A stretch of DNA of 63,662 bases, the filler included, from Octopus bimaculoides (lineage: Eukaryota): NCBI RefSeq assembly GCF_001194135.2. It is 5 parts of 5 records of this genome, joined end to end, with 100 filler letters (N's around TTAATTAATTAA, not from the genome) between each part and the next. Parts side by side here need not be neighbours in the genome. Positions count along the whole stretch, not along the records: positions 1 to 23,168 come from NC_068984.1; 4 more parts are not named here. One strand, 5' to 3'. Below are positions 1,232 through 22,333 of the stretch, in pieces; position 1 is the stretch's first letter, and every line of letters starts with the position of its first letter. The translations under genes and the position numbers were made by a program. The notes beneath the pieces were generated by a model. That model was not told where the DNA came from. It was given only the letters and a program-made list of their open reading frames with translations, and made no database searches.

Positions 1232-1305
1232 GTACTTGTTTCGGCAGTACATATATTAAAATTGGAACGATAGAGGGAAGATTAGCATGGCCTCTGCGCA
1301 AGGAT
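1232..1305 (+). pseudogene. U6: 3'-truncated U6 snRNA copy (about nt 1-74)
   Basis: GTACTTGTTTCGGCAGTACATATATTAAAATTGGAACGATAGAGGGAAGATTAGCATGGCCTCTGCGCAAGGAT matches the U6 5' stem-loop and downstream sequence. The ACAGAGA box is mutated to ATAGAGG and the 3' end is missing. Confidence 0.93.
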
Positions 1306-1309
1306 CTCA

Positions 1310-1373
1310 ACGGTGGTGCTCCAGCATGGCCGCAGCTTTGTAGCTGAAGGAATTTAAAGATTTAAAGATTTCT

Positions 1374-4034: not shown

Positions 4035-4267
4035 TGTAGTAAGAAGCTTGCTTCCCAATCACATGGTTCGGGTTCAGCTCCGCTGCGTGGCGCCTTGGGC
4101 AAGTGTCTTCTACTATAGCCTCGGGCTGACCAAAGCCTTGTGAGTGGATTTAGTAGATGGAAACTGAAAGAAGCCCGCCATTTTTCTAACATTTTTCTGA
4201 CATAATTTAAATATATACTTTAACCAAGTAACACAAGCCTTCTGTAGTTTTTTCACTCTTATTATCT

Positions 4268-4302
<35 letters not shown>

Positions 4303-4520
4303 GTATCTGTCTGTGTGCGTGTCTTTTGTCTGCGTTTGTCCCTCCATCACCCCTTTACAACCGGTGTTGGTGTGTTTACATCCCAGTAACATAGTTGTTC
4401 GGCCAAAGAGGCCGATAGAATAAGTACCAGGCTTTAAAAAGTCCTGGGGTCGACTTAAAAACTTCAAGGCGGTGGTCCAACATGACCGCAGTCAAGTGAC
4501 TGTAACAAATAGAGGAATAA
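4035..4520 (+). mobile_element. SINE-A (tRNA head, CORE-like CCTTGGGCAAGTGTCTT body, internal microsatellite, stem-loop tail)
   Basis: Aligns with the near-intact copies at 21933 and 53020; the head is partly eroded. Confidence 0.85.
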
Positions 4521-4864
4521 AAAAAATGATTGCTTAAAGTACGTACTGTGGTGTCAACGTTGGTGATTGTGGTGTTGTCAAATAATAAAAATATTGATGC
4601 TGGCTTCTAATGGAGCTATGAAAATTAGGCTTTTTTTATCGAGGTTTTCTTTGGACGTTCGTCTGTCAGTGTTGTTATGATAATGGGAGACAACTGGGCG
4701 GTAAAGATATGGCAATGGCTGCGGTGTAAAAATGGGTAAAGCAGAAATGTTGCAATTGATTCGGTCAGCTTATGTGTGTCTTGTTCACCAACTGCAGACA
4801 TTTAGTTGCATTGTTATCACTCAAGCTTTCGCGTTACGAATATTTTCTGAGAACTGTATATAAC

Positions 4865-5051: not shown

Positions 5052-5497
5052 GGAGGCGCAATGGCCCAGTGGTTAGGGCAGCGGACTCGCGGTCATAGGA
5101 TCGTGATTTCGATTCCCAGACCGGGCGTTGTGAGTGTTTATTGAGCGAAAACACCTAAAGCTCCACGAGGCTCCGACAAGGGATGGTANNNNNNNNNNTA
5201 TTGAGCGAAAACACCTAAAGCTCCACGAGGCTCCGACAAGGGATGGTAGCGAACCCTGCTGTACTCTTTCACGACAACTTTCTCTCACTCTTACTTCCTG
5301 TTTCTGTTGTGCCTGTAATTCAAAGGGCCAGCCTTGTCCCACTGTGTCATGCTAAATATGCCCGAGAACTACGTTAAGGGTACACATGTCTGTGGAGTGC
5401 TCAGCCACTTGCACGTTAATTTCACGAGCAGGCTGTTCCGTTGATCAGATCAACTGGAACCCTCGACGTCGTAAGCGACGGATTGCCAACAACAATA
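5052..5497 (+). mobile_element. SINE-C, tRNA-derived SINE with an (AAC)n tail
   Basis: A box TGGCCCAGTGG, B-box-like TTTCGATTCCC, about 440-bp body and CAACAACAATA tail. A 50-bp duplication flanks the internal 10-N gap. Confidence 0.85.
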
Positions 5498-9687: not shown

Positions 9688-10310
9688 CGAAGTGATGCTG
9701 AAAGGTTCCTGGCTTTGAGTAAAAGAAAACCCAGGAGGATCAGTTAATTATGATTTTATTCAACATATAGGCGCATGCGTGGCTGTGTGGTAAGAGGTTT
9801 GCTTCCCAACTACACGGTTCCGTGTTCTGTGCTACTGCGTGGCACCTTGGGCAGGAGTCTTCTTTTATAACTACGGGCCGACGAAAGCCTTGTGAGTGGA
9901 TTTGGTAGACGGAAACTAAGAGAAGCCCGCCGTCATATATATATATATAATATACTTAGGTTTGTGTGAATATATATTTATGTGTGTGTATTCACTTGAC
10001 AACTGATGTTTGTGTGCTTAAGTTCCTGTAACTTAGCAGTTCAGCAAAACAGAACGATGAAATAAGTACCAGGCTTACAAAGAATAAGTCCTGGGGTCGA
10101 TTTGTTCGACTAAAAGGCGGTGCTCCAGCATGGCTGCTGTCAAATAACTGAAACACATAAAAGAATGCAGGAATACTCCCCTCTCAGATTCACACTCTTA
10201 TTGCAGTGACTTTCAGTCTTCCTAAGCCCTGTAAAAGAACCCGGAAGATTGGGCCTCCTGTCATGTTTTTCGCGAAATCCTTAAAGCCAGAAACTTTTTA
10301 GCGCCCCTTG
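9688..10310. mobile_element. Mariner-type MITE interrupted by a SINE-A
   Basis: TA-flanked imperfect TIRs: TA|CGAAGTGATGCTGAAAGGTTCCTGGCTTT and AAAGCCAGAAACTTTTTAGCGCCCCTTG|TA. No ORF. Confidence 0.7.
9768..10165 (+). mobile_element. SINE-A, full length, nested in the MITE
   Basis: TAGGCGCATGCGTGGCTGTGTGGTAAG head through the GGCGGTGCTCCAGCATGG tail. Confidence 0.9.
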
Positions 10311-14476: not shown

Positions 14477-14879
14477 AGTCTCACTAGAGGTTTCTTGAAT
14501 CGGCTTACGTACCGCTATATATCCATCAAATTCGAGAATGAACACGATCAGAGAAAAATTATTGAAACGCAAAAAAAATCAAATATGAACGCGGCAAGTG
14601 TACATTCTAGTTTAGAGAAAATGACGTAATGAGCGATCGGTGTTCTAACTGTTAAGAGAAAGAAGATGAAGTAGAAGTTGAAAGAAAGATAATACTTAGA
14701 CGAATTTTTTTATACTACCAATCAACAAAGCAATAATTCCAATATCCATAATAATGATCCAAAACATAACACCAGTAACAATTCAAATAATAAACTGAGA
14801 ATACCTAGTGATAATAAAACGATAATATTAACAACCGACATACCGTACAGAACCAATCCCTCCAGCGCTCGATGTACAC

Positions 14880-15300
14880 AAACCAACGAAATCAAACTGT
14901 TATGCTCATGCACGGATGGATGAAATTGTCCTTTGCATAACCAATGCATAACTAAGAACGTGGTATACAAGTGTACTATAAACACTAGAGGAGGCCCATA
15001 CATATATATCGGGGCAACCATATCGCCAGCTTTCGAAATAGCCTTAAACGACATGTAACATCACTGGCCAATTTTAACTGGAGGCGTAAGGAAGAGAAGA
15101 GAAAATACTACCTTACATGGTCCATACTTAGACACGCGAGTCACTACAATACTATATCGCGGAAATGTCAGTTATGTTCCGAGGAGTCGCTCTAGATACT
15201 GTTAACAAAAGTACGCATTATAAATAACTTCATTGAACAATTACCCAGATGCCTACACGCAGCTAAACACGCTTCACATATTACAATCCCAACATTACAT
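14880..15300 (+). mobile_element. Penelope-like element GIY-YIG endonuclease pseudogene
   Basis: CSCTDG*NCPLHNQCITKNVVYKCTINTRGGPYIYIGAT, then after a frameshift HIASFRNSLKRHVTSLANFNW...LTWSILRHASHYNTISRKCQLCSEE...RCLHAAKH. Confidence 0.85.
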
Positions 15301-16710: not shown

Positions 16711-16750
<40 letters not shown>

Positions 16751-16763
16751 CATATACATAGAG

Positions 16764-16794
<31 letters not shown>

Positions 16795-16844
16795 AACAGA
16801 GAGAGATATATGCGTGTGTATTTGAATGCTTGCAGGGTTACCTG

Positions 16845-16883
<39 letters not shown>

Positions 16884-17140
16884 CCGTGTTTCTGCGTGTT
16901 TGCGTGTTTATGTATGCGTGTTCCTGCGTTTGTGTGTTTGAGAAGGACAGAGAGAGAGAGAGAGAGAAAAGAAAGGGCGAGCGATANNNNNNNNNNNNNN
17001 NNNNNNNNNNNNNNNNNNNNNNNNNNNNNNNNNNNNNNNNNNNNNNNNNNNNNNNNNNNNNNNNNNNNNNNNNNNNNNNNNNNNNNNNNNNNNNNNNNNN
17101 NNNNNNNNNNNNNNNNNNNNNNNNNNNNNNNNNNNNNNNN

Positions 17141-17177
<37 letters not shown>

Positions 17178-17190
17178 CATATACATAGAG

Positions 17191-17221
<31 letters not shown>

Positions 17222-17271
17222 AACAGAGAGAGATATATGCGTGTGTATTTGAATGCTTGCAGGGTTACCTG

Positions 17272-17310
<39 letters not shown>

Positions 17311-18391
17311 CCGTGTTTCTGCGTGTTTGCGTGTTTATGTATGCGTGTTCCTGCGTTTGTGTGTTTGAGAAGGACAGAGAGAGAGAGAGAGAGAAAAGAA
17401 AGGGCGAGCGATACAGACAGAGAAACAGAGAGAAAAAGAGAGAGAAGGAGAGAGACAGCAGACAAACAAAGAGTGATTAAAAAGAAAGGGTAAGCCGGTG
17501 AGTGTGAATACATCACAAGCGACGGGGAGAGACAGAACTAGAGCTTTGGTCCGAATTAAAGATGATAGAGAGAGATATAGAAGGGGAATAACGATATTAA
17601 TTAGCAAATTTGGCAAATAGAATTATGATTAATTTCATAAATACAAAAGATTTCAAGCTGGAAATCAATTTACTATCAAACAAGTTCAAATATCGACGGA
17701 TATTACTTGTATCGTGGACAAAGTATATCGGTAATTATTATTGCACTTAGCATCGGTTGAATGGGCTGGTAGTGAGATCCTGCGACATGGCAACCTGTTA
17801 TTAGGTGGCTTTGAGAATTATATTGATTTCCTATGTCATGAAACCAATCGTCTATGATAGTTAGTGACCACTTCTCTACAAATCTCGGCGAATGATAAAC
17901 GCGAGAGAAGGGAAATGGAAGAAATTTGCATAGACAAACAGACAATGATATATGCATGAATGTATGTATGTATATAATTAAGTACATATATAAGTATAAG
18001 TATATANNNNNNNNNNNNNNNNNNNNNNNNNNNNNNNNNNNNNNNNNNNNNNNNNNNNNNNNNNNNNNNNNNNNNNNNNNNNNNNNNNNNNNNNNNNNNN
18101 NNNNNNNNNNNNNNNNNNNNNNNNNNNNNNNNNNNNNNNNNNNNNNNNNNNNNNNNNNNNNNNNNNNNNNNNNNNNNNNNNNNNNNNNNNNNNNNNNNNN
18201 NNNNNNNNNNNNNNNNNNNNNNNNNNNNNNNNNNNNNNNNNNNNNNNNNNNNNNNNNNNNNNNNNNNNNNNNNNNNNNNNNNNNNNNNNNNNNNNAGGGT
18301 AAAAAATTTGAAGTTAAGCAGCATGAATAAATGGAGCTTGTACGAAACGTACGTACTGCTATAACCTATTGAATTTTTGTTGCTTATCTTC

Positions 18392-19206: not shown

Positions 19207-20333
19207 AATTAGAATATATTAACAATCTATTTTATATTATACAAGGCAATGTAATATATAGTGTAAACATGTCGGGAATCATTCTAACATCGTCACTGTT
19301 TTTCCAAATCCTGCTGAATTCCGTTCGGAATTTTGGGTCCTCCTAATTCGTCTTGGCATATGTTGCGGTCTACCTTTTATAGTTGTAAATTTTGGTCTGC
19401 CTGAAAATACGGCAAATCAACGTGCATGCCTTTGAGGCATCAAATTGAATAAACGTAAGCTAATTCGTTACTTGTCTACTTTTATTTCCATCGGTATTTA
19501 TTTAACTAATGATCAGCATATTTCTAGAAGGTCTTTTCATTGACATGAAATGATACGATAATTTAAAAGGTTAAGGATTCATGTATTTAACACCAAAGTA
19601 ATGTATATGTTAAATTGCCTGCTAGAGAGACCACACCTTCCCTTCGTTAAGCCCATAGACTAAACTCGAAACTTTTATTTGAGCACGTCGCTGCAAACAA
19701 TGAACTATAGTACTGTGCACTCCCTGTATCTGCACTCTATCTCTCCTTATCTCATTCCACTCTCTCTCAATAAATAACATGGTTGGTTAATCATCAGATA
19801 TAGCATGTCACTTGAATGGGATGTGACTATTTTGAAATGTAACTCACTATAACAGAATGGTTGTGCTTGTTTCCGATATGATTTCGTATATTTGCAGCAA
19901 GCCTCTTCATTTATAGTCTTATATACTTAAAACTTCTTGCTCATACATCGTGGTAAAGGAATAGTTTAACCATGTTGCTCTTATGTATGGAATTGGTGTA
20001 AATCTTAGGAAGGTGAACCCTATATACATATATATATGTATATATATATATATATATATNNNNNNNNNNNNNNNNNNNNNNNNNNNNNNNNNNNNNNNNN
20101 NNNNNNNNNNNNNNNNNNNNNNNNNNNNNNNNNNNNNNNNNNNNNNCGTACGCACACGTACATACATGCATAAACACACCCACGTACTCATATATATATA
20201 TACGCATATATCTATCTATCTATATATATATAATGTACAACTCCGAGATTTACACTACACATAAACAAAAATATTCTCTCCCTCTCACACACACATGCAT
20301 ACACGCACACAAAGAGACACAAACGCACACAAG

Positions 20334-20365
<32 letters not shown>

Positions 20366-20520
20366 TGTCTGTGTAGAAGAGTGAGTGTGAATAATTAAAT
20401 GTCATGATCTACACCATCTCATTCATGCAAACGTAAGTTTTCGCTGTTTAATTTTTGTTTTTGTTTATAACCCTCCAATCATGCGAGATATCACATCAAA
20501 GACACCCATCCACAGATTCA

Positions 20521-20590
20521 CAGTCGTATACTCATGCTCATATACTCACTTTCTATTTCTGATTGTTCTTTCTTTTTATTTTAGGTAAGT
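20521..20590 (+). promoter_or_regulatory. Strong 3' splice site fused to a perfect 5' splice site (recursive splice site)
   Basis: About 59-nt AG-free zone, branch-like TACTCAC, long pyrimidine tract, TTTTAG|GTAAGT (AG at 20583-20584). Confidence 0.65.
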
Positions 20591-20678
20591 ACGCTGCAAA
20601 TTTTCTCTACATCCACTCATGAATAAACGAGGTCGTAGTGGTGTACCAATTCGCTTAGCTGATAAAACCAGACAGAAG
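20585..20678 (+). other. Candidate 94-nt exon (RS-exon, or first coding exon MNKRGRSGVPIRLADKTRQK from ATG 20619)
   Basis: Bounded by the strong acceptor and by AAG|GTAAGT at 20679. All three frames entering from the acceptor hit stops; the ATG frame is open exactly to the donor. Confidence 0.55.
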
Positions 20679-21932
20679 GTAAGTAGTACAGACAGACATT
20701 AGATACAGATGGAAAAAATAAATATCTACTTTACATCTTCGTTTAATTGAATGTCATTGTCTCTCACAAGACTTTGTACTTCTATTAACAAATTTATTGC
20801 TAAGCTTAAAACCAACAGGCATCTTCTCTTTTTATTTATGTCTTGTTTGTATTTCTGTGAAATTGTAAATTTACATTAAAGATAATTTACATTAAAGATA
20901 ATTTACATTAGGTGAATATTTAAAGTTAAAGAAGACGACTGAACAGGGAACGTCTTAATATGAGCAAAAATGGCCTGATTAAAAATCTGAATCGTATGGA
21001 CAATAAATAGAAAAAGCGACACATTAAGTGGAAACATTTGATTGACACACACACACACACATTGTCACACAAACTCACAAACTCTCTCTTTCACACACAA
21101 ATACACAAATATATACTAAGTAACAGATCGATTTCACTCCTCGTATTACGTAAAGTGAATGCGAAAGACGTCCGCCTCTTCGGACATTCAAGCGCAAACT
21201 GAAGAAAAATCAAATTATTCGATATGTATTCGCGTAAGTGTGTGAGTATATATGTGTGCACTGATGTATGTGTGAGTGCTTATGTGTGCATTAATGTGTG
21301 TGTATGTGTCGATCATGTGCTTCCAATAATGAGTTACTTTTTTAAAATTTATTGTTCATATGATTCAAACTTTTAACCAGGCCTTATATATATATCGTTG
21401 CACATGCAACTTTAAGACGATTCTGTCTACTACAAGACTTGAAAAACAATATTCCACTCAAATAATAATCAGACAATATGTCAGTACACACTTGCATATA
21501 ATCGGGCGTTTTGTAAGGCATTTTTCTATTTTTCTTTAATAACCAATAGAGAAAAAATTGAGATGAGTTAAGCAGAAACATAGGTATTAAAAACAAAGAA
21601 AGACAGATCTTTTCACGTAGTATAATGCCTGGAATAACACTTTGCTCTCTCTAGGGGAAAAAAAAATTACTGAATTAATATCTTAATTAAAAGTGTTATT
21701 GCCTGGGGTTAGATATCATAAAAAGAATTCTGGTAAACATCTATCGTTTTGTATAATTTTCATGTGTTTATCAAATTTGATCCTATGACAGAGATTAAAA
21801 TCAATGGTATATGAAGTTTCTCGTCTAGTTTAGAAACACACGCATGCATCGATTTTGCGTCGATAGTTTGACACTTAAATGAATACATAGATACGTAGAT
21901 ACACACACATAAATATTATATATATACATATA

Positions 21933-22333
21933 TAGGCGTAGGAGTGGCTGTGTGGTAAGTAACTAGTTCCGGGTTCAGTCCCACTGCGTGGCACCTTGGG
22001 CAGGTGCCTTCTACTATAACCTCGGGCCAACCAAAGCCTTCTGAGTGGATTTGGTAGACAGAAACTGAAAGAAGCCCGTCGTATATATGTATATATATAT
22101 ATATATGAGCGTGTGTATGTTTGTGTGTCTGTGTTTGTCCCCCAACATCGCTTGACAACAGATGCTGGTGTGTTTAGGTCCCCGTAACTTAGCGGTTCGG
22201 CATAAGAGACCGATAGAATAAGTACTAAGCTTACAAAGAATAAGTCCTGGGGTCGATTTGCTCGACTAAAGGTGGTGCTCCAGCATGGCCACAGTCAAAT
22301 GACTGAAACAAGTAAAAGAGTAAAAGAGTAAAA
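21933..22333 (+). mobile_element. SINE-A, young and near full length
   Basis: Head, CORE-like body, internal (TA)/(TG) tract and (GTAAAAGA)n tail. Confidence 0.92.

What the first reader, a model, noticed from the sequence alone, without database searches (positions are those of the whole stretch)
20521..20684. Textbook recursive splice site with an RS-exon that also carries a start codon
Seen: an AG-free stretch of about 59 nt with branch-like TACTCAC and a long pyrimidine tract ending TTTTAG, followed immediately by GTAAGT (20585) and, 94 nt later, a second perfect donor AAG|GTAAGT (20679). All three frames entering from the acceptor hit stops, but ATG 20619 is open exactly to the donor (MNKRGRSGVPIRLADKTRQK, phase 0). 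Established: AG|GT ratchet points with a cryptic downstream exon are the architecture of recursive splicing in long Drosophila and vertebrate neural introns. Inference: recursive splicing in a giant cephalopod intron, which I do not know to be documented in molluscs. It may act as a switch that includes or removes the translation start of the host gene.
Basis: partly seen in the sequence, partly recalled or inferred. Interest (0 to 1): 0.82.

Follow-up and report, generated by a model that had tools for sequence, protein, structure and literature searches.

The report
Candidate recursive splice site, octopus DNA
A short stretch of non-coding, octopus-like DNA has the sequence layout of a "recursive" splice site, where a long intron is removed in steps, and this layout is too rare to be easy chance; no RNA or cross-species data could be reached to show it is used, and its supposed start codon is no better than chance.

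Summary
A 59-nt AG-free, pyrimidine-rich tract ends in TTTTAG (20579-20584) and abuts GTAAGT (20585-20590). A second donor, AAG|GTAAGT, lies 94 nt downstream (20676-20684). These are the only two AGGTAAGT octamers in the 23-kb piece on either strand.

The 94-nt unit is the best exon-like acceptor/donor pair in the piece. None of 1200 simulated windows held an exon-like pair that also starts with GTRAGT. I estimate 2-5e-5 such loci per window by chance, or a few per octopus-sized genome.

The layout meets the sequence-level criteria for fly and vertebrate ratchet points with an RS-exon. The exception is donor strength: the downstream donor is as strong as the recursive one, which predicts partial inclusion.

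Transcription, intron context, conservation and splicing intermediates could not be tested, because no cephalopod data were reachable.

The start-codon idea is not supported:
- A comparable open ATG occurs in 10-17% of random 94-nt segments.
- The Kozak context is weak.
- No protein matches the peptide.

I found no paper reporting recursive splicing in molluscs. Verdict: a plausible (about 0.45) new member of a known kind, unproven.

The parts
20524..20582 (+). AG-exclusion zone with polypyrimidine tract upstream of the acceptor
   Evidence: The stretch is 59 nt without AG. Pyrimidines make up 18/20 and 33/40 of the last bases. TT at -5/-6 matches 99.5% of fly ratchet points.
20543..20549 (+). 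Candidate branch point TACTCAC (branch A at 20548, 36 nt from the acceptor G); a second candidate, TACTCAT, lies at 20530-20536
   Evidence: Read directly from the sequence. It matches the yUnAy consensus. Its function is inferred, not shown.
20579..20584 (+). 3' splice acceptor TTTTAG (AG at 20583-20584)
   Evidence: PWM score 11.6, rank 9 of 2443 AG sites on both strands. It is the only acceptor scoring above 4 within 20150-21300.
20585..20590 (+). Candidate recursive 5' splice site (ratchet-point donor) GTAAGT, directly abutting the acceptor
   Evidence: After splicing to an upstream exon it would form xxx|GTAAGTA. It out-scores the downstream donor only if the upstream exon ends in CAG, and ties with AAG.
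20585..20678 (+). Candidate RS-exon: 94 nt, not a multiple of 3, with stops in all three entering frames
   Evidence: Best exon-like pair in the piece. Stops shown. GC is 41.5% against 33% and 27.5% in the flanks. No copy exists elsewhere in the piece.
20619..20678 (+). ATG-initiated 20-codon open frame (MNKRGRSGVPIRLADKTRQK) reaching the donor in phase 0; judged a chance feature
   Evidence: Chance frequency is 10-17%. Context is weak, with C at -3 and A at +4. No homologue was found. An AATAAA at 20622-20627 overlaps it.
20676..20684 (+). RS-exon 5' splice site AAG|GTAAGT (9 contiguous bases complementary to the U1 5' end, positions -2 to +7)
   Evidence: PWM score 11.7, rank 3 of 2791 GT sites on both strands.
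20433..20438 (+). Third GTAAGT (AAC|GTAAGT), 152 nt upstream of the acceptor; role unknown and probably unrelated
   Evidence: PWM score 7.5. No acceptor scoring 2 or more lies upstream of it between 20150 and 20523, so it does not close an internal exon.

Best explanation
The locus is a recursive splice site (ratchet point) with its RS-exon, on the + strand inside a long intron of an unidentified octopus gene.

Proposed mechanism, all of it inferred:
1. The 94-nt unit 20585-20678 is recognised by exon definition, through its strong acceptor (long pyrimidine tract, TTTTAG) and its consensus donor AAG|GTAAGT.
2. The upstream exon is spliced to 20585, which removes the upstream intron segment.
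3. That junction rebuilds a donor, xxx|GTAAGTA. This donor competes with the donor at 20679.
4. If the rebuilt donor is used, the 94 nt and the rest of the intron are removed, leaving no trace in the mRNA. If the 20679 donor is used, a 94-nt frame-shifting, stop-containing exon is included (a poison exon).

The two donors are identical from +1 to +7, and the downstream one has AAG on its exonic side. I therefore predict balanced competition and detectable inclusion, closer to an 'expressed' RS-exon than to a fully cryptic one. The ATG in the unit is incidental.

Only the sequence layout and its rarity are shown. Transcription, strand, intron context and the two-step pathway are inferred.
For: The sequence layout is exact.
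- The only two AGGTAAGT octamers in 23 kb, on either strand, are 94 nt apart. The first sits on a pyrimidine tract that is 18/20 Y with 59 nt free of AG.
- The unit is the best exon-like acceptor/donor pair in the piece.
- 0 of 1200 Markov-simulated windows have an exon-like pair that starts with GTRAGT. The analytic chance rate is about 2-5e-5 per window.

Published sequence criteria are met.
- Tandem acceptor-donor, a short downstream-donor-defined RS-exon, and out-of-frame or stop-containing exon content (PMC8605326).
- TT at -5/-6 and a prominent pyrimidine tract (Duff preprint).

The context is compatible.
- There is at least 20.5 kb upstream with no coding exon or Pfam domain. This lies within the 2.6-63.6 kb range of fly recursive segments.
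- The unit is not part of a repeat, not a known RNA, and not structured.
- PMC6224609 shows that a very strong rebuilt donor is used even when the exon junction complex is present. So if this is an exon at all, some recursion is expected.
Against: - There is no evidence that the + strand is transcribed or that the piece is intronic.
- No conservation data could be obtained.
- In flies and mammals the ratchet-point donor is generally stronger than the RS-exon donor. Here it can exceed it only if the upstream exon ends in CAG.
- A few such loci per 2.7-Gb genome are expected by chance. A similar number of ordinary exons should start with GTAAGT by chance. The posterior therefore depends on how common recursive splicing is in octopus, which is unknown.
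- A strong exon-like pair alone occurs in 4.7% of simulated windows.
Confidence: 0.45

Rival explanations
1. The unit is an ordinary internal exon: a cassette or poison exon, a 5'-UTR exon, or an exon of a long non-coding RNA. It happens to begin with GTAAGT, it is spliced conventionally, and the rebuilt donor is not used (for example because the exon junction complex represses it).
For: Strong acceptor and donor scores make it the best pair in the piece. Its own donor is at least as strong as the rebuilt one for 62 of 64 possible upstream exon ends, which favours inclusion. Hundreds of annotated human exons start with donor-like sequence and are still included (PMC6224609). At 2-3e-4 per position for GTAAGT, dozens of real exons in a genome should start this way by chance.
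Against: Given an exon, the chance that it starts with GTAAGT is only about 2-3e-4. Raising the strength of the rebuilt donor drives recursion even with the exon junction complex present, and GTAAGTA is the maximal intronic half-site. Stops in all frames mean it cannot be a constitutive coding exon. No protein contains its translation.
Confidence: 0.25
2. This is a chance juxtaposition of splice-site-like motifs in AT-rich, pyrimidine-tract-rich non-coding DNA. It is either not transcribed on this strand or ignored by the spliceosome.
For: No transcript, annotation or conservation evidence is available. Exon-like pairs this strong arise in 4.7% of simulated windows. AG-free runs of 59 nt or more are common, at 59 of 1190 AG sites. 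A few full composites are expected per 2.7-Gb genome, and the first-stage scan selected this locus because it looks textbook. The ORF, the stops, the CpG content and the RNA fold are all within chance.
Against: The full composite is expected about 2-5e-5 times per window and appeared in 0 of 1200 simulations. Both AGGTAAGT octamers of the piece fall exactly here. GC content in the unit is higher than in the flanks, as in exons.
Confidence: 0.25
3. This is the reader's version: the unit is the translation-start exon of the host gene, and the choice between recursion and inclusion switches the start codon at 20619 in or out.
For: The ATG at 20619 is the only ATG in the unit and is open in phase 0 to the donor. 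The in-frame TAA at 20586 would stop any upstream frame, so translation would have to start at this ATG.
Against: An ORF of this kind occurs in 10-17% of random 94-nt segments. The context CTC ATG A lacks a purine at -3 and a G at +4. No protein shares three 5-residue words with the peptide in 5.8 billion clusters. The only HMMER hit in 1.84 billion representatives is a spurious match to a bacterial-type repeat protein, and it includes residues upstream of the ATG. Caveat: a control search with an octopus SINE ORF also found nothing, so cephalopod coverage of that database is doubtful.
Confidence: 0.04

Closest known systems
Drosophila intronic ratchet points with cryptic RS-exons (kuz, Bx, the Ubx ratchet point, luna; Burnette 2005, Duff 2015, Joseph 2018/2021)
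   Same: Both have a tandem acceptor|donor with a very prominent pyrimidine tract, TT at -5/-6 and GTAAGT. Both have a short downstream-donor-defined exon that is out of frame and carries stops. Both sit many kb from any coding exon.
   Different: This is a different phylum, and no RNA evidence exists. The RS-exon is 94 nt against about 50 nt in flies. Its donor is a perfect consensus and is not weaker than the ratchet-point donor. The acceptor is TAG rather than the commoner CAG. Conservation is untested.
Expressed RS-exons: Drosophila Ubx mI/mII, msi, heph, ps (Hatton 1998; Joseph 2021)
   Same: The exon starts with a functional donor, so inclusion or skipping is decided after the first splice. 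Balanced donor strengths predict mixed outcomes.
   Different: The Ubx microexons are 51 nt, frame-preserving, coding and ultraconserved. This unit is 94 nt, frame-shifting and full of stops, so including it would be non-productive inside a coding region.
Vertebrate cryptic RS-exons in long neuronal genes (CADM1/2, ANK3 and others; Sibley 2015) and annotated RS-exons repressed by the exon junction complex (Blazquez 2018, PMC6224609)
   Same: Both use exon definition of an RS-exon with premature stops, followed by competition between the rebuilt donor and the exon's own donor.
   Different: Vertebrate sites lie in introns longer than 100 kb and were found from sawtooth RNA profiles. Here the intron length and the host gene are unknown. 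The seven species surveyed by Blazquez et al. include no mollusc.
Poison or decoy cassette exons
   Same: All are short, strongly defined exons with stops in all frames, whose inclusion would trigger nonsense-mediated decay or hold up splicing.
   Different: Poison and decoy exons do not need a donor at their first base. The exact AG|GTAAGT abutment is what sets this locus apart.

Membership tests
Recursive splice site (ratchet point) with RS-exon | Juxtaposed 3' acceptor and 5' donor: (Y)n-NAG|GTRAGT | tested here: met
   TTTTAG|GTAAGT at 20579-20590. It is the only YAG|GTRAGT in 23 kb on either strand.
Recursive splice site (ratchet point) with RS-exon | Unusually prominent pyrimidine tract, with TT at -5/-6 (99.5% of fly ratchet points) | tested here: met
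   Pyrimidines are 18/20 and 33/40 of the last bases, with 59 nt free of AG and T at -3 to -6.
Recursive splice site (ratchet point) with RS-exon | A downstream 5' splice site defining a short RS-exon | tested here: met
   AAG|GTAAGT lies 94 nt downstream. This is the best exon-like pair in the piece.
Recursive splice site (ratchet point) with RS-exon | RS-exon content is out of frame or carries premature stops (cryptic class) | tested here: met
   94 nt is not a multiple of 3, and all three frames have stops. This is weak evidence, because 50-76% of random segments do the same.
Recursive splice site (ratchet point) with RS-exon | Ratchet-point donor stronger than the RS-exon donor (needed for traceless removal) | tested here: inconclusive
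   The result depends on the unknown upstream exon end. The ratchet-point donor is stronger only with CAG, equal with AAG, and weaker with the other 62 triplets.
Recursive splice site (ratchet point) with RS-exon | Lies deep inside a long intron on the sense strand of a transcribed gene | not testable with these tools
   No annotation or transcripts were reachable. The piece has no coding exon or Pfam domain, which fits either intron or intergenic DNA.
Recursive splice site (ratchet point) with RS-exon | The acceptor|donor motif is conserved in related species above the intronic background | not testable with these tools
   No cephalopod collection is available. The metagenome scan gave 0 matches. 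Four window ORFs are not on record. The SINE-ORF control found no homologues.
Recursive splice site (ratchet point) with RS-exon | Splicing intermediates: exon-to-ratchet-point junction reads, sawtooth coverage, recursive lariats | not testable with these tools
   No RNA data were available.
Translation-initiation exon | ORF longer than chance, favourable ATG context, and homologous N-termini in other proteins | tested here: not met
   The ORF has a chance frequency of 10-17%. C at -3 and A at +4 give a weak context. No homologue was found, although database coverage of cephalopods is doubtful.
Interspersed repeat or transposon-borne exon | Further copies of the unit, or overlap with a repeat family | tested here: not met
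   No copy exists in the piece. A genome-wide copy number could not be tested.

The most novel reading that the evidence does not exclude
This would be a functional recursive splice site in a lophotrochozoan, which my literature searches did not find reported. Its RS-exon would be more than a poison exon: it would carry the host gene's start codon. The competition between the rebuilt donor at 20585 and the donor at 20679 would then decide whether the mRNA receives this ATG and a 20-residue N-terminus. That would be a translational switch built on recursion.
Probability: 0.04. Interest if true: 0.65.

Novelty: new member of a known kind. Interest (0 to 1): 0.35.

Why it matters
Recursive splicing with RS-exon definition has been shown in flies and vertebrates. 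I found no paper reporting it in molluscs or cephalopods. Coleoid cephalopods have large genomes with long introns and large nervous systems.

A validated ratchet point in octopus would do two things:
- It would extend the mechanism to the third great bilaterian branch, which would argue that it is ancestral or readily re-evolved.
- It would give a concrete locus for studying how donor competition is set when both donors are consensus.

The gain is incremental. A specialist would expect recursion in long cephalopod introns, and a single sequence-only candidate is a lead, not a discovery.

Tried and rejected
1. Peptide homology.
- A doubled peptide against 5.8 billion clusters gave no candidate.
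- HMMER of the 37-aa read-through against 1.84 billion representatives gave one spurious hit, a bacterial-type repeat protein.

2. Retrieving the locus or relatives.
- An exact 27-mer in JGI metagenomes gave 0 matches.
- Four window ORFs looked up by identity were not on record.

3. Control for database coverage. An ORF through the octopus-type SINE found no homologue. The negative peptide result therefore carries little weight.

4. Host-gene search. ORF lists and stop-to-stop frames are all microsatellite or N-gap artefacts. Pfam on the ten longest complex frames gave nothing above threshold.

5. Repeat or transposon origin. There are no copies in the piece.

6. Known RNA or RNA structure. 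Rfam gave only sub-threshold microsatellite-type miRNA hits nearby. The fold z-score is 0.18.

7. A short intron from 20433 to 20584 with an upstream internal exon. Rejected, because no acceptor lies upstream of the 20433 donor.

8. Minus-strand readings. ACTTACCT is the reverse complement of the donor motif and resembles the U1 5' end. Rfam finds no U1 there, and there is no minus-strand ORF of 20 aa or more across the unit.

9. CpG and GC as exon marks. GC is higher in the unit, but four CpGs are within chance: 24% of 94-nt windows have as many.

Full report
**Observation.**
- The nearest upstream AG is at 20522-20523, so 20524-20582 is a 59-nt AG-free stretch.
- The stretch contains TACTCAC at 20543-20549, with a branch-type A at 20548, 36 nt from the acceptor.
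- It ends in a tract that is 18/20 and 33/40 pyrimidine.
- The acceptor TTTTAG (AG at 20583-20584) abuts GTAAGT at 20585-20590.
- A second donor, AAG|GTAAGT, lies at 20676-20684, which makes a 94-nt unit.
- All three frames entering at 20585 hit stops. The single ATG (20619) is open for 20 codons to 20678.

**Is it more than chance?**
- AGGTAAGT occurs only twice in the 23-kb piece, both on the + strand and both at this locus. Markov models of order 0-4 expect 0.14-0.47 per strand.
- I scored sites with a simple metazoan splice-site weight matrix whose frequencies I supplied from memory. On that scoring, 20585-20678 is the best acceptor/donor pair in the piece on either strand, at 23.4 against 19.7 for the next.
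- In 1200 order-3 Markov windows of the same size, a pair this strong appears in 4.7% of windows. Splice-site strength alone is therefore only mildly unusual.
- No simulated window had an exon-like pair that also begins with GTRAGT.
- An analytic estimate multiplies the octamer rate, a 2% fraction of positions with a good tract, and the rate of a second octamer within 25-250 nt. It gives about 1e-9 per base per strand, which is 2-5e-5 per window and a handful per 2.7-Gb genome (the genome size is from my own knowledge).
- The ORF is not unusual. An ATG open for 20 or more codons to the end occurs in 17% of random 94-nt segments of the piece and in 9.6% of shuffles. Stops in all three frames occur in 50-76%.

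**Surroundings.**
- The piece is AT-rich (36% GC), crowded with microsatellites, and interrupted by seven N gaps.
- It carries three same-strand copies of a tRNA-like-head SINE. From my own knowledge I recognise this as the abundant octopus SINE, so the cephalopod attribution is reasonable.
- Long ORFs are all microsatellite or N-gap artefacts. Pfam finds nothing above threshold in the ten longest complex frames.
- The piece could therefore be intron or intergenic. 'Giant intron' is an assumption.
- The unit itself is not repeated in the piece. It matches no Rfam family and folds no better than shuffles, with z = 0.18.
- A third GTAAGT at 20433 has no acceptor upstream of it, so it does not define an internal exon.

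**Comparison with the defining features of recursive splicing.**
- Joseph et al. (PMC8605326) define ratchet points as tandem acceptor-donor pairs that sit at the 5' end of a short cryptic RS-exon (about 50 nt) flanked by a downstream donor. [quoted passage not shown] The ratchet-point donor is usually stronger than the RS-exon donor, so the exon is removed.
- Duff et al. add a very prominent pyrimidine tract, TT at -5/-6 in 99.5% of fly sites, and recursive segments of 2.6-63.6 kb.
- Blazquez et al. (PMC6224609) show that exons starting with a donor-like sequence can also be constitutively included, because the exon junction complex masks the rebuilt donor. Very strong rebuilt donors are used anyway.
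- This locus meets every criterion that can be read from sequence, with one reservation. The two donors are identical from +1 to +7 (GTAAGTA) and the downstream one has AAG on its exonic side. The rebuilt donor therefore out-scores it only if the upstream exon ends in CAG, and ties with AAG.
- On the competition model this predicts substantial inclusion of a 94-nt frame-shifting, stop-containing exon. That behaviour is closer to an expressed or poison RS-exon than to traceless zero-length recursion.

**The start-codon idea.**
- The context is weak: C at -3 and A at +4.
- The ORF length is within chance.
- No protein in 5.8 billion clusters shares three 5-residue words with the peptide.
- HMMER against 1.84 billion representatives returns one hit at E = 1.2e-4, a 2026-aa bacterial-type repeat protein. 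The match runs through residues upstream of the ATG, so it is spurious.
- A control query, an ORF through the SINE, also found nothing. Four window ORFs are not on record in the assembly index. The databases therefore seem to hold little octopus sequence, and this negative is weak.
- Overall the start-codon reading is unsupported, but it is not strictly excluded.

**What could not be tested.** I could not test + strand transcription, host-gene identity, conservation in other cephalopods, or splicing intermediates. The one exact-match scan of metagenome contigs found nothing.

**Weighing the readings.**
- Per window, a chance composite and an ordinary exon that happens to start with GTAAGT and end in a consensus donor are each expected at roughly 2-5e-5.
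- A true ratchet point of this quality is expected at a similar or somewhat higher rate if octopus has a fly-like number of sites, and at a lower rate if it resembles mouse.
- A rebuilt GTAAGTA donor is likely to be used at least part of the time if the unit is spliced at all.
- I therefore put about 0.45 on functional recursion here, about 0.25 on an ordinary exon without recursion, and about 0.25 on a non-functional coincidence. The start-codon switch gets about 0.04, nested within the first two.

**Novelty.**
- Full-text searches combining 'recursive splic*' with cephalopod, octopus or mollus* returned only coincidental reference-list or passing mentions.
- The cross-species survey in PMC6224609 includes no mollusc.
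- If validated, this would be a new member of a known kind in a new phylum. That is useful but expected by specialists, so interest is moderate.

Noticed in passing
window 1232-1371 (+): A U6 snRNA-like sequence (Rfam RF00026, 66 bits, model positions 1-72 of 105) is fused directly to the 3' tail of the local SINE family (ACGGTGGTGCTCCAGCATGGCCGCAG...). It looks like a truncated U6/SINE-tail chimeric retrocopy, reminiscent of the U6-LINE template-switch chimeras known in mammals.
   Followed up: partly
window about 4065-4527, 9745-10175 and 21910-22330 (all +): Three same-orientation copies of a composite SINE, 76-85% identical. Each has a tRNA-like head (GGCG..GTGGCTGTGTGGTAAGAAGC..GGTTCAGTCCCACTGCGTGGCACC), an internal TA/TG microsatellite and a conserved tail. 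From my own knowledge this is the abundant octopus SINE. The GTAAGT at 21955 is a variant inside the SINE head.
   Followed up: partly
window 16714-16986 = 17141-17413, and 5139-5188 = 5199-5248: Blocks that are 100% identical lie immediately before and after N gaps (16987-17140 and 5189-5198). These are almost certainly scaffolding artefacts of a draft assembly, not biological tandem duplications.
   Followed up: yes
window 20622-20627 (+): A canonical AATAAA polyadenylation hexamer overlaps the ATG of the candidate RS-exon (ATGAATAAA). The hexamer is common here, with 29 on the + strand and 27 on the - strand, so this is probably chance. It would still matter if the unit could act as a cryptic terminal exon.
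   Followed up: no
window 14844-15077 (-) and 14513-14648 (-): These are the next-best exon-like acceptor/donor pairs in the piece, on the minus strand (scores 19.7 and 18.3). Neither has a coding signal or a Pfam hit. I did not examine them further.
   Followed up: no
window 20433-20684 (+): Three GTAAGT hexamers fall within 250 nt, against about 0.05-0.09 expected. The first, at 20433, has no partner acceptor upstream, and its role, if any, is unexplained.
   Followed up: partly
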